A stretch of DNA of 64,000 nucleotides. It comes from Vitrella brassicaformis CCMP3155 (taxonomy: Eukaryota > Protista > Chromerida). The stretch is from positions 1 to 64,000 of the forward strand of contig CDMY01000458.1 of the NCBI GenBank assembly GCA_001179505.1, read 5' to 3'. The notes below the pieces were generated by a model, which had not been told where the DNA came from, did no database searches, and saw only the letters and a list, made by a program, of their open reading frames with translations. Positions 18,772 to 48,394 of this stretch are shown piece by piece; position 1 is the stretch's first letter, and each line of letters opens with the position of its first letter. The position numbers and the translations under genes are program-made.

Positions 18772-19782
18772 TCATGTTTGCTGCTGCTGCCCTCCTCCCT
18801 GCTGCTGTCCGCCAGTGTGCCAGGTGCGCTGAGAGGATTGGGCATAAGTGGATAAGGCCGGTCGCCAGTAGTCGCCGCTCTGTCTGTTGGTGTTGCTCGG
18901 CTGGTTCCTCCATCCACTGTCATTGTTCCTGTTGGTATTGTTGTATCTGTTGTCAGGTCGTCTGTCAGTCCATCCCTTCCTCTCATCATCATACTGACTA
19001 CGCTGGTCTTGACAGTCATGTTGTCTTCCGGATGGACGGCCGTTCTGCTGATGTTGACGGTCTCGTTGCTCTCTTCGCAGCTGTGTCATGCGGTCATTCG
19101 CATTACGAAGAGCTTCTTCAAATTGCGGCCACGTCAGTGCTTCTCCACGATACGCGCGGGATGCTGACTCATGCGCCATGGTTGCCTTGAACATGTCGAA
19201 TCTCTCAGGCAATGCCGATAGCATGACGGCGATCATCGTCTCGTCTGGCACTGTTGATCCGACTTCATGAAGGCGGCTGACGAGATAGCTGAAGTCGCCA
19301 AGGGCGTCGTCAAGATCGTCCTTGATCATCTTCCAGCTGAAGAATCGCTGCAAGAGCTCGTGCTTGCATACGATACGATCAGGTATGAACCGCTTCCGCA
19401 GTTCTAGATACGCCCATGCACCATTCTCGCCGTGCTTCTGGTATGCTTCTTGAATCAGTCGCTTGGCCTTGTCTGCTGTCTGCAGGGCGAGGAAGCCGAA
19501 CAGCCATCGGAGGTTCTTGGCGTTGGAGCTCTCCTGCTCAATCAGGATTGGCTGTCCCTGCTGGTTCACCACGGGCTGATTATTGCCATCCATCTGTGGC
19601 ACCGCTATCTTCATCGGCGGGACGTCCTCATCCTTAGTAGGTAGATAGACTTTCACATCCATCTCTCTTGCTGCCAAGTAGGCTCTGAGAGTAAAGTCCC
19701 ATTCACGCCACTTGATGTCGTTCTCGCCACTCCTGCCGGTAAAGACGGGGAAGGTGGCCTTGGTCTCGAGATTGAGTGTCAT
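18772..19782 (-). CDS. gag: copia gag polyprotein
   Basis: 336-aa ORF directly upstream of the protease; typical copia gag motifs. Confidence 0.8.
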   Translation of the reverse strand: MTLNLETKATFPVFTGRSGENDIKWREWDFTLRAYLAAREMDVKVYLPTKDEDVPPMKIAVPQMDGNNQPVVNQQGQPILIEQESSNAKNLRWLFGFLALQTADKAKRLIQEAYQKHGENGAWAYLELRKRFIPDRIVCKHELLQRFFSWKMIKDDLDDALGDFSYLVSRLHEVGSTVPDETMIAVMLSALPERFDMFKATMAHESASRAYRGEALTWPQFEEALRNANDRMTQLRREQRDRQHQQNGRPSGRQHDCQDQRSQYDDERKGWTDRRPDNRYNNTNRNNDSGWRNQPSNTNRQSGDYWRPALSTYAQSSQRTWHTGGQQQGGGQQQQT

Positions 19783-41716: not shown

Positions 41717-42480
41717 TCAATCATCCTCCTGGCCTTCGTCAGCCCACGACGGTGTGTGCGCCGCAGTGCTGCCCGCCGTGGCCGGCTGGGTGGTCACTGC
41801 AGGCGACATGCGTGGCCAAGGCGACGGACCCGCACCACCCCCACCCCCACCAACCTGGGTACAAGAGAGAGGGGACGTGCCCTGAGTGCCTTCATGTGTG
41901 TGTGTGTGTGAACTGACCAGTTTGGTCGGTGACATCATCATGTTCATGTCTTGGATGTCTTGTGTCTGTTCGAGGAGCATGGCCTTGACCTCGGGCAGCT
42001 TGCCGGCTTCTCTGCGGAAGCAGTCGAAGCACCGGGGGGCGGCAGACAGCTCAATCAGCTGGCGATGGTCGAAACGCTCGGGGCCTGCCACACACACACA
42101 GAGAGAGAGAGTGGAGGGCAGAGAGAGACATTTGTGTGTGTGGGGAAGGAAGGTTGCAGACAGACATACAAGCCAGGTTAGTGAAGGGGTCGGCGGGATC
42201 CATAACGAGCGGCCGCTGGGCCAGCAGCGGACCCCAGATGTCACCGTACTGCACTCAACACAGTATGGGATGAGTGTGTCTCTCCCTCCCTCTCTCCATC
42301 TCCCCCTCCCTCACTCACCTCGTAGGCGGCGAGCTTCGCACTCTCCGGCAACTGCTGCTGCTGCTCCTTCTGGTGTGCAGTATCAGTGTCGTTGTCAGCC
42401 CCCCATGTGAGGTTGAGTGACGCGAAACCTCGACACACCTCAAACACTCCTGCCACCACACACAACAGACTCCCCTGCAA

Positions 42481-42513
<33 letters not shown>

Positions 42514-42571
42514 TGAAGAGAGAGAGTAGACTCGCTGCTTTGTGGCCTTTTTCGTGCGGATTGCCTGCTGC

Positions 42572-42609
<38 letters not shown>

Positions 42610-45600
42610 GTGGTGCCGTAGTTGGTGTGCCGCATGTATGCCGAGCAGCTCCAGCAGGTAGTCCGACGGAGTGGTGAGCGCACTCGACCACGGCTGCCGC
42701 GACGACCACAGATGCACCAGACGCATCGCCTCCTTCACCTGCACACACACACACACACGTGGGTGTGGGGGGCATGGGGGCTTTGGGCGGAGGGGATGGG
42801 GGGCCGGTACATATTTGTTTTGCTGTGCGACGATCTGTGTGGCGTGTTTGGCGGATGCTGGGGTGAGGTAGTGCCTGAGGTGCTGGGGGGTGTCCCGCAC
42901 ACACGACCACAGCGAGGAGGGCGTCGCATACACGGGGCTCAGCTGAATCCTGCACACCACACCACCACGCAACTTTGCTTCTCCCTCCCTCCCTCTCTAG
43001 GCCCTTTCCGACCTTATGTGCAGCGGTCCGGCCTTGTCGATCATGTCCCTCTCCTCGTCGCCCAGCCCGTCGACATCTCTGCGGACGGGCTTCTCCGGCA
43101 CCATCTCGAGGCACACACCACTCCCGTCGCCGCCCACACAGAAGTTGCCCGCCTGGTGGGAGGCCAGGTGCACCTGCAAGATGGCCTGCAGTGTCTCGAG
43201 GATCGACGGCAGCCTGACAGACAGAGAGAGGGGGAGAGAGGGAGAGGGAGAGGGAGGGGTGGGTTTAGGGTGTGTGGGCGAATGTGATGGGGCTTGGCTG
43301 TACCGAACCGACCATTTGTGGTGGTCTTTGTGCGGCAGCTGCTTGACCATGAGGACGATGAGGGCGTCGGCCTTCTCCAACGTCACCAGACCCTTGCCCA
43401 CACCCCCACCTGTGTGTGTGTGTGTGTAGAGTGTAACCACCACCAAGACACAGACAGTGCTGTCTCCCGTGTGCTCTGTGTGTGTGTGTATGTGTGTGTG
43501 TGTGTGTATGTGTGTGGAAGGGGTGGCTAGCGCACCTCTGACGACTTCTGTGACGGCGAGAAACGACTGCGTGGCGAGGATCTCGCAGAGAGCCGACACA
43601 CTCGACTGCACACTGCACACATGGACAGATAGAGACAGAGGCAGCAAAAGAAAACAGTGCTGTAGTGGATGTGTGTGTGTGAGTGTGTGTGTGTGTGTGT
43701 ATACGTCTTATAGTGCGCCTTTGACGCATATTTGTCGTGGATATCGTGGAGAATGTCGTCGGTCAGCTCCAGCGAATACATACGCTGCAGCAGCTGCCTG
43801 TGCACACACACACACACACACACATATATACAGAGAGAGAGACACAGACACTCACCTTTTCATAGCGCCGGGGGACGGCTTCGTCTCACCCACACCGCCA
43901 CCAGCACCAGCAGCAGGGGCAGGCAGCCTGCACAAGCAAAGCAAAGCAAGGCCACCATATCACATCTATGGCGGTGTGTTGATGTCGATGTGTGTGTGTG
44001 GGTCACTCACTTGGTGGTGTCGTCTGTATCTTTCCCGTCCCCCTCCCCGTCCCCCTTGTTAGTGCGAGTATCACTGTCCGTGTGGGCGTGTGTGTTGGCG
44101 TCAGAACGGACTGGCCTCTGGTGCAGTGCCACCATGCTGACACATAGAGAAGCTCAATTATCGGCTGTGTGTGAGGTGAGATGTGAGGGGGTGTGGTGAA
44201 ATATACCCGTTCCCGATGAGTCTGAAGGTCTGTGGGTGTCGCTTGAAGAGCACTGACGGCCGCACACCCACAATGGCTGCACGCGCGACACACACATACA
44301 TACACACACACACACATAGACACGATGGCTGCACCTTGGACACGTACCACTGACGGGGGTCTTGTGTTTCCTTCTGAAGGTGTCGCAGAGGGCGGACACC
44401 TGCACACCATTACTCGCCCCTGCAAACACCAACACACACACGTATGCCCCGTGTGTGTGTGTGTGTACCGTGTTGCTCCTCGATCAGTTTGGCCAGCTCC
44501 TTGACGACGGCCGGCTCATCCTCAGGCACACTGCGATCAGGCCTCTCACCACCACCACCACCACCGCCACCACCACCGCCACCACCACCGCCACCACCAC
44601 CGCCACCACCGCCACCATCAGCAGCAAACTTGCCGTCTGCACACACACCATACCGATGCCCCCAACACATACACACACACACACACACGGACGCGCCCGC
44701 CCACCGGTGTGTATGTGTCTGTGCAGTGACGCCATCGGGGGCTCAGCGTCGCCCCTGAACTGAAACAGCTGAGGGTTCTCACACAAGTAGGCCGCCGTCG
44801 GTGTCCCCAACACACTCGACAAACTGACACACACACACACACACACACAATCAGCGGGGGATTTGGCGTGAGAGAGGCGTGTGTGCGCACCTGCAATGGT
44901 GCTCCAGCTCGAAGCGTCGTTCGAGGTCTGCAACGGACATCGCCCCCTCCGCACCGCTCAATATCACCTGCCCCACACACATCCATCCATCCATCCATCC
45001 ATGGCTCCGGCACACACACGCACGATTGGGTGTACTGTACTCCTGGACTGACCTGGACGGCCTTGAGCACGTCGCCATGCTCCCACTGATACTCACCATG
45101 CCCACTCCCACTCTCACTCTGATGATTACGATCGCCCTCTCCCTCTCCCTCGTCGCCCCCACCACCCTCCTGCAAGTCGCCGTACCCCGGCGGCGGACAC
45201 TCGTCGTCCACACCCACCCCCACACCCATGCCACACACCCCCATGCCCCAGTTCATAGTGGTGCTGCCATGGTGGCCACTGTGGCTGCTGCTGTAGGGGG
45301 CGAGGTAGGCCTCGGGAGTGTAGGCGTACGGCTGCTGCTGCTGCTGCTGGTGGTAGCTGCACTGGTAGTGGTCATCCTGCTGCAGGTGGTGGCTGTAGTG
45401 GTGCATGGCTGGGTGTGGGTGTGGGTAAGGGGTGGGCGGGGGGAGTGGGGGCATGTTCTGCGCCTCTGGGCACCTGACCAACCATCGGACACGGCACACA
45501 CACACATCTTTGCGTTGCGTGTGTGTAGTGATGTGTTGTGTCTGTTGGGCTAGCTAGGTAGCTACAGGGAAATGATGAAGGAGGCGCCCCCTCCGACGGT

Positions 45601-45910
45601 TCTGGCAACGTTCTGCACGTCAAATATATCGGGCCGCGCCTCGAGCACCTCCATGAGGGTCATGGGGTTGCGGGGGTAGGCCTCCTTTAGCGACAGCATC
45701 AAACTCCGACCATAGTGCGCCGAATAACTGCAACACCACACCATCATCCACCAGAATGGATGGATGGATGTGTGTGTGTGCAGGGCAGGGCACCGACCTT
45801 GCGGCGAGTTGTTCGATGGCGAGTGGCTGCGGCCTCAGCAGATCCACCAGCTGGTTTGTCAGAGAGACCGCATCCGGGCTGAGGTGGGCCGCCATCCGCA
45901 GAGCCACCAT
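41717..45910 (-). CDS. OAS-like (2'-5' oligoadenylate synthetase fold) nucleotidyltransferase, probably catalytically inactive, with three N-terminal OST-HTH/LOTUS-like domains
   Basis: Spliced protein contains VSALCEILATQSFLAVTEVVRGGGVGKGLVTLEKADALIVLMV (OAS: [25 protein letters not shown]), IRIQLSPVY (VEFDVLPAF), VKEAMRLVHLW, PSDYLLELLGIHA (PPQYALELLTVYA), FASLNLTW, RPLVMDPADPFTNL (RPVILDPADPTGNL). About 17 exons; start codon tentative. Confidence 0.82.
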
Positions 45911-46127
45911 GTCAAACGGGACGCCGCTGGCCGACACAGCCTGCAGGCAGCAACACAGACAGCACACGCTCAACGACACAGACAGATACCTGTGCACCAC
46001 CATGTGTTTGTTGCCACTACCATCGCAAGGCGATTCCGGTGTTGTAAACACAACGGAAAGCGACCAGCGTTCTGATCTCTGAGTCTTACCCGTGTATCAA
46101 GACCATCCATTCACGCAGGGAAGAAAA

Positions 46128-48394
46128 ATGGGCGCCTTTAAGGGCTGCAAAGCGGCCTACTGGTCCGTGGCCGTGCTGGCCATCCTGAAATGGTTCTTCC
46201 TCCGAGCCATCACCCTCGTCAACCTCTCTCCAGCTGCAGCAGATAGCCATCTGGACCAGCCCCTGTTGCTCACATTCCTCACCTTCCTTCCCACGACCGC
46301 CCTGTCCACCGTGCTCGTCGTGTGGCTCCTGTGGTGGTGGTGGTGGTGTGCGCCGCTGGAGGAGGGCGACAGACCCAGACCACCCCAGGGCCCCCCGGTG
46401 GCCTCGGCCGCCTCGGCAACCATGGTGGCCTCTGCGGCCGGCGTCCCGCCCGGCACGCCAGAGATCGCTATCGTCGAGAGGGGGCTGCTCTCATCACCGA
46501 TGGCACACGGAGCGAGGCTCTCCCTCGCTGAGGCGGTGTGCCGGATGCTGTGGCTGGGGTTCATGCCGGCGGTGCTGGACGCCCTCGCCACGGTCATGCT
46601 GCTATACGCCTTTGTCCGCCTTCCCAATGGGCTGTTCTCTCTGCTGCGGTCCTCCCTCCTCGTGTTTGTGCCCATCTGCTGCCAGTGTGTGCTGCACGCC
46701 GGCGTGCTGACGCGGATGCAGCATGTGGGGGGCTGGGTCGTTGCCGCGGGGCTTGCTCTTGCGGCGTATACGGCGGTGTTTGAGCAGCCGGCCACTGCTG
46801 GTGCTGGTGTGGGTGTGGTGTTGGCTTTGGCGGCGGGGTTGATGCAGGCGGTGCATGTGGTGTGGGAGGCGGTGTGCTATGAACAGCTTCTCGACCCGAA
46901 CGAGGCGGAAGGTCTCAGATCGGTAGGTTGCGTGGTGATGTGCGCGGCGGTTTTGTGGGCATGGATGGCTGGATGTGTGTGTGTGTGTGTGTGTGTGTGC
47001 AGGTGGTGTTTGTGTGTCTCGAGGGGTTTTGGAGCATGGGCATGGTGGTCGTCGTCATGTTTGTCGTCCCCCTGCACACCAGGGTCGACTTGTGGCACAC
47101 AGCCGTCCTGGTACACACACACACACACACACACACACATGAAGGAGGACAAGGGGGAGGGGCTGCATCGCATCGGCCGTCTGTCAGAGTTTGTTCTGCG
47201 TGTGTCGTGTCGTTGTGTGCAGGGATTTCACAACGAGGCCCTCCTGCTGTGTGCGGGCGGATTCACTCTACTGGCGGCGATGCACCTCTACAGTGAGGGA
47301 GACGGAGAGAGCACACAGACAGACCAGACAGACGGAGAGGCCGTCTCTTTCTCATGCTATGCCGTCTCTGTTCCCTCTGTCAGCCGTTTTTTGCTGCTAT
47401 GACCAAGCAGCTGGCCACAGATGCCTTGCGGAACTCCTGACAACACTCGCCATGTGCGCCTGCCTTTGTATGCCGACACGCATCTATGTCTCTGTGTGTC
47501 TGTCTGTCTCTCTCTGTGTGTGTGCAGGTATGGGTTGGACGAGCTGCTGTGGCGCTATTATGGGTATGAGGGGTACGGCCCCATCTTTGTCCACTCCGTC
47601 GATATGGCCTTCAAGATCGTGGGCGTCGGCCTCGTCACAGCTGGCAAGAACACCAGACCACATCACTGCGCGGCGAATGTGGTGCTGTTGTCCATCTCTC
47701 TCTGTCTCTGTGTGTGTCTGTGTGTGTCTGTGGTTGTGCTGGCTAGGTACAATGTTGTACGCCGAGTGCGCGTCGATTCGGGACTGCTGCCCGCTGACCC
47801 TCCCCCCTCCCCGACCAGCCCCGCTACACATCCCCGACAACCACATGTTCGCTCCCAACGCCCCGCCCCCCTGCACAGCCAAGTACATGCCCCGCCATCC
47901 CCTCATCCCCCCTCTACTCAAACAACCGAAGACCACCCACCACGGTGCACACAAGGGGGCCCCTCATCGGCCCTCTGCGACGCCTGGAGCCGCCCAGCAG
48001 CAGCAGTGGCAGTGGCAGCGAGGAGGCGCTCGCGAGAGTGGGGCAGCAGCTGCAGAGGCCTGTGCGGAACCTGATCCGCTTTCTGAGGGACGGACATCCC
48101 CCCGAGAGCATGACGCGCGCCACGAGCCTGCAAGAGCCGATTCTTCCTCGTGGTGGGGGTGAGGACCATGACCATGATCAGGGGCGAGAGATATATGAGG
48201 CGCTGGCGGGAGAGCTGCGAGGCCCTGATGGGGGGAGTGGAAACGGAGACGCTGTCACGCCGCGGACGGCTGATGCGGTGCTGGAGCGTCCTCATGGGCA
48301 GTGGCGGCCACATGTGCCGGTGACGTATGTGGCCAATACGTATGCCAACACACCGAGGGCTGGCACTGGCCACCACAGTGGCACCCAGCAGTGA
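46128..48394 (+). CDS. Drug/metabolite-transporter superfamily protein, SLC35F/nucleotide-sugar transporter-like
   Basis: About 9-10 hydrophobic segments; QPLLLTFLTFL, PAVLDALATVMLLYAFVRLPNGLFSLLRSSLLVF, VCLEGFWSMG; long hydrophilic C-terminal exon ending at 48394. Confidence 0.75.

What the first reader, a model, noticed from the sequence alone, without database searches (positions are those of the whole stretch)
42770..43610. Catalytic triad of the OAS-like domain appears substituted (pseudoenzyme)
Seen: ungapped alignment to the OAS motif GGSSGKG..SDADLVV gives GGGVGKG..ADALIV (the Ser of GS is lost; second Asp is Leu), and VEFDVLP aligns with IRIQLSP (third Asp is Gln). There is also a long insert (QAGNFCVGGDG..DMIDKAG) and a poly-Gln insert in the C-lobe. 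Established: the metal-binding Asp triad is needed for 2-5A or cyclic dinucleotide synthesis; human OASL and DZF proteins (NF90/NF45) are inactive versions of this fold. Inference: a non-catalytic RNA sensor or scaffold, possibly convergent with OASL.
Basis: partly seen in the sequence, partly recalled or inferred. Interest (0 to 1): 0.7.

Follow-up and report, generated by a model that had tools for sequence, protein, structure and literature searches.

The report
Catalytically dead OAS domain, Vitrella
A gene of the alga Vitrella brassicaformis joins three RNA-binding winged-helix domains to a domain with the fold of the antiviral enzyme OAS that has lost its metal-binding residues, as has every relative found in dinoflagellates and their kin, so it most likely binds or scaffolds RNA and does not make 2'-5' oligoadenylate.

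Summary
On the minus strand, about 45910 to 41717, lies a hand-modelled 20-exon gene with GT-AG introns throughout. Its C-terminal half is an OAS-fold domain.

- **Glycine loop:** OAS1 GGSSGKG is GGGVGKG here, so the Ser is lost.
- **Strand beta2:** D-A-D is D-A-L.
- **Third-Asp strand:** it reads HIRIQLSP and has no acidic residue. Neither is acidic.

The gene belongs to an apparently undescribed family of one to four Egalitarian/LOTUS-type winged helices plus an OAS-like domain. I found it in dinoflagellates, Alphamonas, Digyalum and a second Vitrella paralog. None of 79 members has a full acidic triad. The triad columns are among the most variable in the family, while the window gene keeps 38 of 42 highly conserved columns.

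A model of a homolog's domain (pLDDT 93) matches OASL, OAS3 domain I and OAS1 at Z 25-27.

Best reading: a conserved pseudoenzyme acting as an RNA-binding or RNP scaffold. This parallels OASL, NF90/NF45 and Egalitarian.

The scan has already reported an inactive LOTUS-OAS gene on other DNA of this genome (s1-212026).

The joined spliced protein was not searched or folded.

The parts
45798..45910 (-). Exon 1 from ATG 45910: first half of winged helix 1 (MVALRMAAHLSPDAVSLTNQLVDLL...)
   Evidence: Sequence. Family HMM positions 10-33 fall here, weakly (E about 4).
45566..45727 (-). Exon 2: second half of winged helix 1. The donor CCCT|GTAGCT is weak and an in-frame TAG follows at once, so the link to exon 3 is inferred.
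   Evidence: Family HMM positions 33-74, E=0.009; phase bookkeeping.
45053..45473 (-). Exon 3: low-complexity Pro/Gln/His/Gly-rich linker
   Evidence: Open frame with GT-AG borders.
44705..44967 (-). Exons 4-5 (44967-44891, 44823-44705): winged helix 2 (MSVADLERRFELEHHC / LSSVLGTPTAAYLCENPQLFQF)
   Evidence: Sequence pattern matches the family's second winged helix by eye. This unit has no significant HMM hit.
44207..44636 (-). Exons 6-8 (44636-44469, 44419-44348, 44276-44207): poly-Gly linker plus winged helix 3 (VVKELAKLIEE / VSALCDTFRRKHKTPVS / IVGVRPSVLFKRHPQTFRLIGNG)
   Evidence: The winged-helix profile A4 hits the three exons colinearly (HMM 8-24, 19-46, 31-73; best E=4.3e-5). Family HMM E=9.5e-5.
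43856..44136 (-). Exons 9-10 (44136-44011, 43927-43856): acidic and Gly-rich linker
   Evidence: Open frames, GTGAGT donors, consistent phases.
43536..43797 (-). Exons 11-12 (43797-43705, 43612-43536): N-terminal helices of the OAS-like domain, then strand beta1 (SFLAVTEVVR)
   Evidence: aligned to the family; family HMM positions 409-464.
43313..43409 (-). Exon 13: G-rich loop GGGVGKG (OAS1 GGSSGKG) and strand beta2 A-D-A-L-I-V-L (OAS1 S-D-A-D-L-V-V). The Ser is lost, the first Asp kept, the second Asp is Leu.
   Evidence: BLASTP to family members up to 67% identity, E=2e-11.
43013..43213 (-). Exon 14: helix LPSILETLQAILQVHL, beta3-beta4 hairpin, an acidic loop about 20 residues longer than in relatives, and the start of beta5 (PLHI + first two bases of the Arg codon)
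42811..42949 (-). Exon 15: completes the Arg at the OAS1 D147/148 position, then IQLSP and the start of the C-lobe. The R195 and K199 equivalents are Thr and Ala.
42532..42738 (-). Exon 16: C-lobe helix VKEAMRLVHLWSS (K213 equivalent is His), TTPSDYLLELL, and the 17-Gln insertion
   Evidence: Pfam OAS1_C positions 43-90, E=0.016. Family HMM E=5e-14 for this stretch.
42319..42474 (-). Exon 17: C-lobe helix (VVAGVFEVCRGFASLNLTW) and a Gln-rich loop
42170..42248 (-). Exon 18: YGDIWGPLLAQRPLVMDPADPFTNLA, the OAS signature (OAS1 RPVILDPADPTGNL)
   Evidence: Pfam OAS1_C positions 131-150, E=0.014. Family HMM E=1.8e-6.
41717..42084 (-). Exons 19-20 (42084-41918, 41854-41717): end of the OAS-like domain (RCFDCFRREAGKL, at the position of the OAS1 CFK motif), Gly-rich tail, stop TGA at 41719-41717
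   Evidence: Family HMM E=5.6e-5.

Best explanation
The stretch is part of a real, intact Vitrella brassicaformis gene on the minus strand (about 45910-41717; 20 hand-modelled exons, about 917 codons). It encodes three Egalitarian/LOTUS-type winged helices, low-complexity linkers and a C-terminal OAS-fold domain.

The OAS-fold domain is a pseudoenzyme. It keeps the fold, the glycine-rich loop and the C-lobe signature. It has only one of the three metal-binding carboxylates (D-A-L on beta2; Arg and Gln on beta5). It has no GS serine and no Lys213 equivalent. It therefore cannot carry out two-metal nucleotidyl transfer, which means no 2-5A and no cyclic oligonucleotides.

The loss is ancestral to a conserved myzozoan family (dinoflagellates, colpodellids, squirmids, chromerids).

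Inferred mechanism: the winged-helix array binds structured RNA or an RNA helicase. The dead OAS domain serves as a further RNA, nucleotide or protein docking platform. This is the logic of Egalitarian (three LOTUS-like domains plus an exonuclease-homology domain not known to act as a nuclease), of NF90/NF45 and of OASL.

Shown: the fold, family membership, the substitutions and the family-wide lack of constraint on the triad. Inferred: RNA binding and the scaffold role.
For: Organism: window ORF 18775-19782(-) is an exact V. brassicaformis CCMP3155 protein.

Gene integrity: all introns are GT-AG with consistent phases and the exons are open.

Family:
- The representative search gave WH+OAS proteins from Alphamonas, Digyalum and MMETSP dinoflagellates.
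- Word searches gave about 90 members, including Symbiodinium, Prorocentrum, Ceratium, Pelagodinium and a 1352-aa Vitrella paralog, P0083.
- Pfam finds WH_Egal (PF23713) and OAS1_C (PF10421) above cutoff in homologs.
- The family HMM maps colinearly onto the window gene only.

OAS homology: profile versus PDB gives OAS2 6e-29, OAS1 3e-19 and OASL 2e-15, with residue-level alignment over both lobes.

Fold: AlphaFold2 of P0002:130-470 gave pLDDT 93.1 and pTM 0.91. VIA-align Z was 27.1 to OASL, 25.9 to OAS3 domain I and 25.5 to OAS1, against about 20 for CdnC and NF90/NF45.

Triad: 0 of 79 members have a full acidic triad. Triad columns sit at the 91st-92nd percentile of entropy, while the G-loop sits at the 0-12th. 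The window keeps 38 of 42 highly conserved family columns.

Winged helix: the model (pLDDT 93.5) best matches Oskar, TDRD5 and Tejas LOTUS domains and Egalitarian domains bound to mRNA stem-loops (PMC13186709).

Requirement for the three Asp: PMC6019448 and PMC6307210.
Against:
- No public protein matching this gene was found, so expression and splicing are inferred.
- The window protein itself was not folded, because joining exons was excluded. The geometry comes from a homolog that is about 45-65% identical in the conserved exons.
- Window exons alone give only weak Pfam hits (E about 0.015) and no PDB hit.
- The G-rich loop with its Lys, and in most relatives a Glu at the second Asp position (66 of 79), are strongly conserved. 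Some ligand or metal contact may therefore survive.
- An acidic residue three residues before the retained Asp (E-K-A-D; also in P0002, P0083 and P0074) could in principle approach the site.
- RNA binding by these winged helices is untested.
Confidence: 0.6

Rival explanations
1. The domain is still an enzyme with an unconventional active site. For example, the retained Asp together with the Glu three residues upstream (LEKAD), or carboxylates from the enlarged acidic beta4-beta5 loop, bind metal and support nucleotidyl transfer.
For: The first Asp is retained. An acidic residue at -3 recurs in the chromerid and colpodellid-type members (window, P0002, P0083, P0074). The G-rich phosphate-binding loop and its Lys are highly conserved. 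The window's beta4-beta5 loop is rich in Asp and Glu.
Against: The -3 position is Gly in 52 of 79 members, and the first-Asp column is among the most variable. No member has three carboxylates in either register. The GS Ser and the Lys213 equivalent are also gone. The acidic loop is specific to this one gene, and in the homolog model the equivalent shorter loop is the least confident part of the N-lobe (pLDDT 80-89).
Confidence: 0.07
2. The dead OAS domain is mainly a dimerisation module, as in the DZF domains of NF45/NF90. The two Vitrella paralogs (this gene and P0083) form a heterodimer that brings two winged-helix arrays together.
For: Vitrella has two divergent paralogs with the same architecture. 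NF90-NF45 DZF heterodimers are among the structural matches (Foldseek E about 4e-9; VIA Z 18-20). Both DZF proteins are also catalytically dead NTase folds attached to RNA-binding modules (established knowledge).
Against: OAS-family structures match clearly better than DZF (Z 25-27 against 18-20). No DZF Pfam hit. No interface analysis was possible. Only one protein per species was noted for the species named in the hit lists, but copy number per species was not examined.
Confidence: 0.15
3. The locus is a decaying or non-functional duplicate of the better conserved paralog P0083. The substitutions, poly-Gln run and loop expansion simply reflect relaxed constraint.
For: Low-complexity insertions (poly-Gln, poly-Gly, an acidic loop). 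The winged helices are more divergent than in relatives. No matching protein was found in public collections. Leu at the second Asp position is unique in the family.
Against: Twenty open exons with canonical GT-AG borders and consistent phases. All five invariant residues of the OAS domain (alignment A3) and 38 of 42 highly conserved columns are retained. The loss of the triad is shared by the whole family, including strongly conserved dinoflagellate orthologs, so it is not a sign of decay of this copy.
Confidence: 0.08
4. The domain is a ligand receptor and not a scaffold. It binds a nucleotide or oligonucleotide (ATP, 2-5A-like or cyclic oligonucleotide) through the conserved G-rich loop, without turnover, and so switches the RNA-binding activity of the winged helices.
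For: The loop G-G-x-x-G-K-G is at the 0-12th percentile of variability although catalysis is lost. NF45/NF90 DZF crystals exist with bound ATP, UTP and CTP (entry titles 4at8, 4at9, 4atb).
Against: Conservation of the loop may be purely structural, since it is a tight turn after beta1. The Lys213 and Gln229 equivalents that contact ATP in OAS1 are changed (the roles of these two residues are from my own knowledge and were not found in the paper I checked). No ligand evidence.
Confidence: 0.12

Closest known systems
Human OASL (OAS-like domain, PDB 4XQ7)
   Same: Best structural match of the family model (Z 27.1, rmsd 2.9 A over 289 residues). An OAS fold with the catalytic Asp residues replaced and no 2-5A synthesis (PMC6019448, PMC6307210). 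The dead domain is combined with a non-catalytic partner module.
   Different: OASL carries two C-terminal ubiquitin-like domains and acts in vertebrate RIG-I signalling. This protein carries three N-terminal Egalitarian/LOTUS-type winged helices and no ubiquitin-like domain. The loss of the triad is independent and much older, being shared across Myzozoa. Only about 20% sequence identity.
OAS1 / OAS2 / OAS3 (2'-5'-oligoadenylate synthetases; PF10421)
   Same: Homologous over both lobes (profile E 3e-19 to 6e-29). Same strand order, G-rich loop, LxxLxxW helix, PSDY/W-LLEL helix and DPxxPxxN motif. OAS3 domain I and OAS2 domain I are also inactive.
   Different: The metal triad is not kept (only the first Asp in the window gene). 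The GS Ser, Lys213, and the dsRNA contacts R195 and K199 are not conserved. The domain is fused to winged-helix repeats. Not interferon-linked. No RNase L partner is known in alveolates (not searched here).
NF90/NF45 (ILF3/ILF2) DZF domain proteins
   Same: A catalytically dead template-free NTase fold joined to RNA-binding modules. Structural similarity at Z 18-20.
   Different: A different branch of the fold, scoring lower than OAS. DZF proteins use dsRBDs and zinc fingers, not winged helices. Heterodimerisation is proven for DZF and unknown here.
Drosophila Egalitarian (Egl)
   Same: The winged helices match Pfam WH_Egal (PF23713) in homologs (E down to 2e-11). Structurally they match Egl domains bound to mRNA stem-loops (9rw6, 9rw3, 9rvy). 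Egl likewise has three LOTUS-like domains followed by an exonuclease-homology domain, and together they grip RNA (PMC13186709).
   Different: The C-terminal module is an OAS fold, not an exonuclease fold. No BicD or dynein light-chain motifs were examined. The structural match of the winged helix is weak by Foldseek E-value (0.04-0.1).

Membership tests
OAS family (OAS1_C, PF10421; OAS fold) | Sequence homology to OAS over the N and C lobes | tested here: met
   Window exons G and I each hit PF10421 colinearly (E 0.016 and 0.014, each below the gathering score on its own). Homologs pass the cutoff. Family profile versus PDB OAS2/OAS1/OASL gives E 6e-29 to 2e-15. Family HMM versus window exons gives E 3e-22 and 2e-14.
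OAS family (OAS1_C, PF10421; OAS fold) | OAS-type three-dimensional fold | tested here: met
   Tested on the homolog P0002:130-470, not on the window protein. pLDDT 93.1; Z 25-27 to OASL, OAS3 domain I and OAS1, against about 20 for the next families.
Active 2'-5'-oligoadenylate synthetases | Three metal-binding Asp (human OAS1 D75, D77, D148) | tested here: not met
0 of 79 relatives have all three acidic.
Active 2'-5'-oligoadenylate synthetases | G-S motif serine of the NTase signature hG[GS] | tested here: not met
   GGSSGKG corresponds to GGGVGKG in the window. Ser at the second position occurs in 1 of 79 relatives.
Active 2'-5'-oligoadenylate synthetases | dsRNA-contact residues R195 and K199 | tested here: not met
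   By the alignment to 4ig8 these are Thr and Ala in the window, and Asn and Gly in the family consensus. The role of these residues is from PMC6019448.
Active 2'-5'-oligoadenylate synthetases | dsRNA-stimulated synthesis of 2-5A | not testable with these tools
   Needs an enzyme assay.
OASL | Inactive OAS-like domain followed by tandem ubiquitin-like domains | tested here: not met
   The inactive domain is present. There is no ubiquitin-like domain: the C-terminal tail is a 45-residue Gly-rich stretch and the read-through ORF covering the tail gave no Pfam hit. A relative, P0095, does have an N-terminal ubiquitin domain.
DZF (NF45/NF90) | DZF domain signature and DZF-type fold as the best match | tested here: not met
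   No DZF Pfam hit. DZF structures score Z 18-20, below OAS at 25-27.
Myzozoan WH(Egl/LOTUS)-OAS-like family (unnamed) | Colinear architecture of one to four Egl-type winged helices followed by an OAS-like domain, with the family's invariant residues | tested here: met
   Family HMM positions 10-738 map in order onto 46096-41720 of the minus strand. Winged helix 3 matches the winged-helix profile. The five invariant OAS-domain residues of alignment A3 (Gly of the loop, Trp of HHKW, Trp of HLW, Pro of TTPSD, Pro of MDP) and 38 of 42 highly conserved columns are retained.
LOTUS / OST-HTH (PF12872) and WH_Egal (PF23713) | Pfam match and winged-helix fold of LOTUS type | tested here: inconclusive
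   Homologs pass WH_Egal (bits 34-45, cutoff 27). OST-HTH is only E=0.079. The window's own winged-helix exons give no Pfam hit. The winged-helix model matches Oskar, TDRD5 and Tejas LOTUS and Egl domains with probability 0.9-0.99 but E 0.04-0.25.

The most novel reading that the evidence does not exclude
The family is an ancient alveolate counterpart of Egalitarian and NF90. In this reading it is an mRNA-selecting adaptor in which an array of Egl/LOTUS-type winged helices and a dead OAS domain jointly clamp structured RNA. It may work as a heterodimer of the two Vitrella paralogs. It would then be part of the post-transcriptional control on which dinoflagellates and their relatives are thought to rely heavily (my own knowledge). 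That would make OAS-fold pseudoenzymes a recurrent and very old solution for RNA recognition, not a vertebrate oddity.
Probability: 0.25. Interest if true: 0.75.

Novelty: new variant of a known kind. Interest (0 to 1): 0.55.

Why it matters
Catalytically dead OAS-fold proteins are known from vertebrates (OASL, the inactive domains of OAS2 and OAS3) and, more distantly, from DZF proteins.

Here the same outcome appears in a conserved, apparently undescribed protein family of dinoflagellates, colpodellids, squirmids and chromerids. In this family the dead domain is permanently joined to Egalitarian/LOTUS-type winged helices.

This shows that 'OAS-like' hits in protist surveys of innate-immunity genes (for example PMC10732462) cannot be read as 2-5A or cyclic-oligonucleotide signalling without checking the active site.

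It also points to a candidate RNA-binding factor in a lineage where, to my knowledge, gene regulation is largely post-transcriptional. And it gives a natural series of states for studying how an NTase becomes a pseudoenzyme: D-x-D kept in P0074, one Glu kept in most dinoflagellates, one Asp kept in Vitrella.

Tried and rejected
- **Pfam and PDB on read-through ORFs.** Scans of 42997-43647 and 42244-42972, and a PDB search with exon D alone, gave nothing related to OAS. The exons are too short and the intron translations too biased. Only exact exons G and I gave weak OAS1_C hits.
- **Word search with ORF2.** It found nothing because of the length window.
- **Search for the gene's own public protein.** None turned up in the representative library or in the profile word search. 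P0083 from Vitrella looked at first like the self protein, but its sequence differs throughout, so it is a paralog.
- **Joined model.** For that reason no phylogeny of the window gene was made. Per-exon BLAST shows it about equally distant from all members, slightly nearer the 'T-type' group P0002, P0060, P0062 and P0070-73.
- **Paralogs in the window.** None found.
- **Rejected families.** DZF or CD-NTase/cGAS membership was rejected because the structural scores are lower and there are no Pfam hits.
- **Literature.** Searches for a described LOTUS-OAS or alveolate OAS family found nothing.
Full report
**What is there**

The window is eukaryotic DNA with short GT-AG introns full of (CA)n and (TG)n repeats. 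Window ORF 18775-19782(-) is, residue for residue, a protein of Vitrella brassicaformis CCMP3155. That settles the organism, which earlier notes of the scan had also named.

The finding lies in a minus-strand gene. I modelled it by hand as 20 exons from ATG 45910 to TGA 41719-41717, about 917 codons. Every intron is GT-AG and every junction keeps the frame. The junction codons even supply two conserved family residues: a Gly of the G-rich loop that is near-invariant, and the invariant Trp of 'HHKW'.

The weakest point of the model is the exon 2 donor (CCCT|GTAGCT at 45566), which is followed at once by an in-frame TAG. The attachment of the first winged helix therefore rests on colinearity with relatives only.

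**Check of the observation**

- Exon 13 (43409-43313) encodes GGGVGKGLVTLEKADALIVLMVKQLPHKDHHKW.
- The exon 14/15 junction gives GPLHIR|IQLSPVYATP.
- Exon 16 carries the 17-Gln run.

Taken alone, the window pieces are hard to place. Read-through ORFs gave no relevant Pfam or PDB hit, and exon 13 alone gave none. Only exons 16 and 18 touched Pfam OAS1_C, colinearly, at E about 0.015 each. The link to OAS becomes solid through relatives.

**The family**

A full HMMER search with ORF 42244-42972 found eight proteins. Five of them have the same architecture: Egalitarian-type winged helices (PF23713) followed by OAS1_C (PF10421) above the Pfam cutoff. They come from Alphamonas edax, Digyalum oweni and MMETSP dinoflagellates.

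Two word searches raised this to about 90 members. These include Symbiodinium, Prorocentrum, Ceratium and Pelagodinium. They also include a 1352-aa Vitrella protein, P0083, which is a paralog and not this gene.

Dinoflagellate members are 55-70% identical to one another over the OAS-like domain. That degree of conservation fits a core function better than an arms-race gene.

An HMM of 48 full-length members hits only this locus among 1902 six-frame segments of the window. The hits run in order from HMM position 10 to 738 along 46096 to 41720 (ORF pieces E=1.9e-14 and 3.3e-22; exon 18 1.8e-6; exon 19 5.6e-5). A profile of the family's winged helix covers exons 6-8 colinearly. No public protein for the window gene itself was found.

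**Homology to OAS and the active site**

A 51-sequence profile of the OAS-like domain finds, in the PDB, OAS2 (6e-29), OAS1 (3e-19), OASL (2e-15) and OAS3 (2e-10). The alignments span both lobes. The window exons were added as separate fragments. The mapping below is read from those alignments.

| OAS1 feature | Window | Family (79 members) |
|---|---|---|
| GGSSGKG loop | GGGVGKG | G-G-A-A/V-G-K-G |
| First Asp (D74/75) | Asp | Highly variable: Q25, A13, E7, I7, H6, D5... |
| Second Asp (D76/77) | Leu | Glu in 66, Thr in 7 |
| Third Asp (D147/148) | Arg of HIRIQLSP | Q24, H12, T9, S8, K6, R5... |

That column is Tyr, Phe or Trp in most relatives. The HMMER register is backed by two OAS1_C fragments, P0001 and P0007, which read 'VDL[RK]FSP' with Asp at the same spot. 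Both positions face the same side of the strand and neither is acidic, so the conclusion does not depend on the register.

Further findings on the site:
- None of 79 members has three acidic residues in either register. Only nine have both beta2 positions acidic. The GS Ser occurs once.
- By column entropy, the first- and third-Asp columns lie at the 92nd and 91st percentile of variability.
- The G-rich loop lies at the 0-12th percentile.
- The window gene matches the consensus at 38 of 42 highly conserved columns.
- The Lys213 equivalent is His in the window (Thr in most relatives).
- The dsRNA contacts R195 and K199 are Thr and Ala.

The three Asp are the metal ligands required for 2-5A synthesis (PMC6019448, PMC6307210).

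**Structure**

The OAS-like domain of the Alphamonas relative P0002 (residues 130-470; D-A-T on beta2, ITIQISP on beta5) folded with pLDDT 93.1 and pTM 0.91. Strand beta2 starts exactly at the retained Asp (DATIVLFV) and beta5 is TQITIQISP.

Foldseek ranks OASL, OAS1, OAS2, NF90/NF45 and OAS3 domain I first. VIA-align gives Z 27.1 (OASL), 25.9 (OAS3 domain I) and 25.5 (OAS1), clearly above CdnC and DZF at about 20. The two best matches are themselves inactive OAS domains.

The two insertions fall as follows:
- The window's poly-Gln run falls in the loop that is disordered in the model (residues 233-254).
- The 'long insert' reduces to about 20 extra acidic residues in the beta4-beta5 loop. The part before it is the normal beta3-beta4 hairpin.

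**The N-terminal half**

A model of the family's best conserved winged helix (pLDDT 93.5) most resembles the LOTUS domains of Oskar, TDRD5 and Tejas. It also resembles the 'Egl domains' of Egalitarian in complex with mRNA localisation stem-loops. The probability is 0.9-0.99 but the E-values are weak.

The 2026 Egl-BicD paper describes Egalitarian as three LOTUS-like domains followed by an exonuclease-homology domain, which together recognise dsRNA signals (PMC13186709). The present family has the same layout with a dead OAS fold in place of the exonuclease-homology domain.

**Interpretation**

The OAS-like domain is a pseudoenzyme, at about 0.85 for that part alone. The loss predates the divergence of the myzozoan lineages sampled.

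The most likely role (inference) is an RNA-binding or RNP scaffold. The winged helices would engage RNA or a helicase, and the dead domain would act as a docking or clamping surface.

Rivals:
- a residual unconventional active site using the retained Asp and the Glu at -3;
- a DZF-like dimerisation module pairing the two Vitrella paralogs;
- a nucleotide-binding switch using the conserved G-rich loop;
- a decaying duplicate.

Intact exons and retained family residues argue against the last of these.

**Comparison and novelty**

The domain is a member of the OAS fold family by sequence profile and structure. It fails the defining tests for an active synthetase. It is not OASL, because it has no ubiquitin-like domain, and it is not DZF.

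I found no paper describing a LOTUS/Egl-OAS fusion or an alveolate OAS pseudoenzyme. The survey of eukaryotic OAS-like proteins in PMC10732462 does not use the terms 'active site', 'alveolate' or 'dinoflagellate'.

Within this scan, another agent has already reported an inactive triple-LOTUS-OAS gene on another piece of this genome (s1-212026). That may be the paralog. First readers also noted the LOTUS-OAS fusion at this locus. I therefore rate this a new variant of a known kind.

**Limits**

- The joined spliced protein was neither searched nor folded, and no tree was built for it.
- Residue-level structural superposition was not available. The register of the third site therefore rests on profile alignment and on the P0001 and P0007 fragments.

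Noticed in passing
P0095 (443 aa, from a Logan assembly): A relative with an N-terminal ubiquitin-like domain (PF00240), then one winged helix and an OAS-like domain with a degenerate triad (T-A-E; S/R). This is an OASL-like pairing of ubiquitin fold and dead OAS outside animals, in reversed order.
   Followed up: partly
P0074 (715 aa, EukProt transcriptome GEMP01...): The only member that keeps D-x-D (D-F-D) on strand beta2 and a Ser in the G-loop, but it has Ser at the third Asp position. This may be an intermediate stage of active-site decay.
   Followed up: partly
P0083 (Vitrella brassicaformis CCMP3155, 1352 aa, on a 232-kb contig): A second Vitrella paralog with better conserved winged helices, GGSVACG, D-V-S on beta2 and FSVSVVP on beta5, plus a long low-complexity tail. 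Two paralogs in one genome raise the possibility of a heterodimer as in NF45/NF90.
   Followed up: partly
window 41717-45910 (-): No exact or near-identical protein for this gene appeared in the 1.84-billion representative library or in the word searches, although a neighbouring ORF is an exact public Vitrella protein. The locus may be unannotated or modelled differently in the public annotation.
   Followed up: partly
window 18775-19782 (-): This 336-aa ORF is an exact public Vitrella protein. It clusters at 90% identity with six other proteins (five from different Vitrella contigs, one from a JGI metagenome contig), several of them shorter, so it looks like a multi-copy, lineage-specific gene or repeat-borne ORF.
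   Followed up: no
P0046 (Prorocentrum cordatum, 1138 aa): A protein kinase and EF-hands joined to the OAS-like domain in one annotated protein. This is either a merged gene model or a further fusion.
   Followed up: no
window 45562-45570 (-): The exon 2 donor is non-consensus (CCCT|GTAGCT) and a TAG lies in frame right after it. If the intron is retained, translation would end after the first winged helix, giving a 91-residue product.
   Followed up: no
window 46092-47402 (+): A long open frame on the opposite strand starts about 180 bp upstream of the gene's ATG, suggesting a head-to-head neighbour. Not examined.
   Followed up: no
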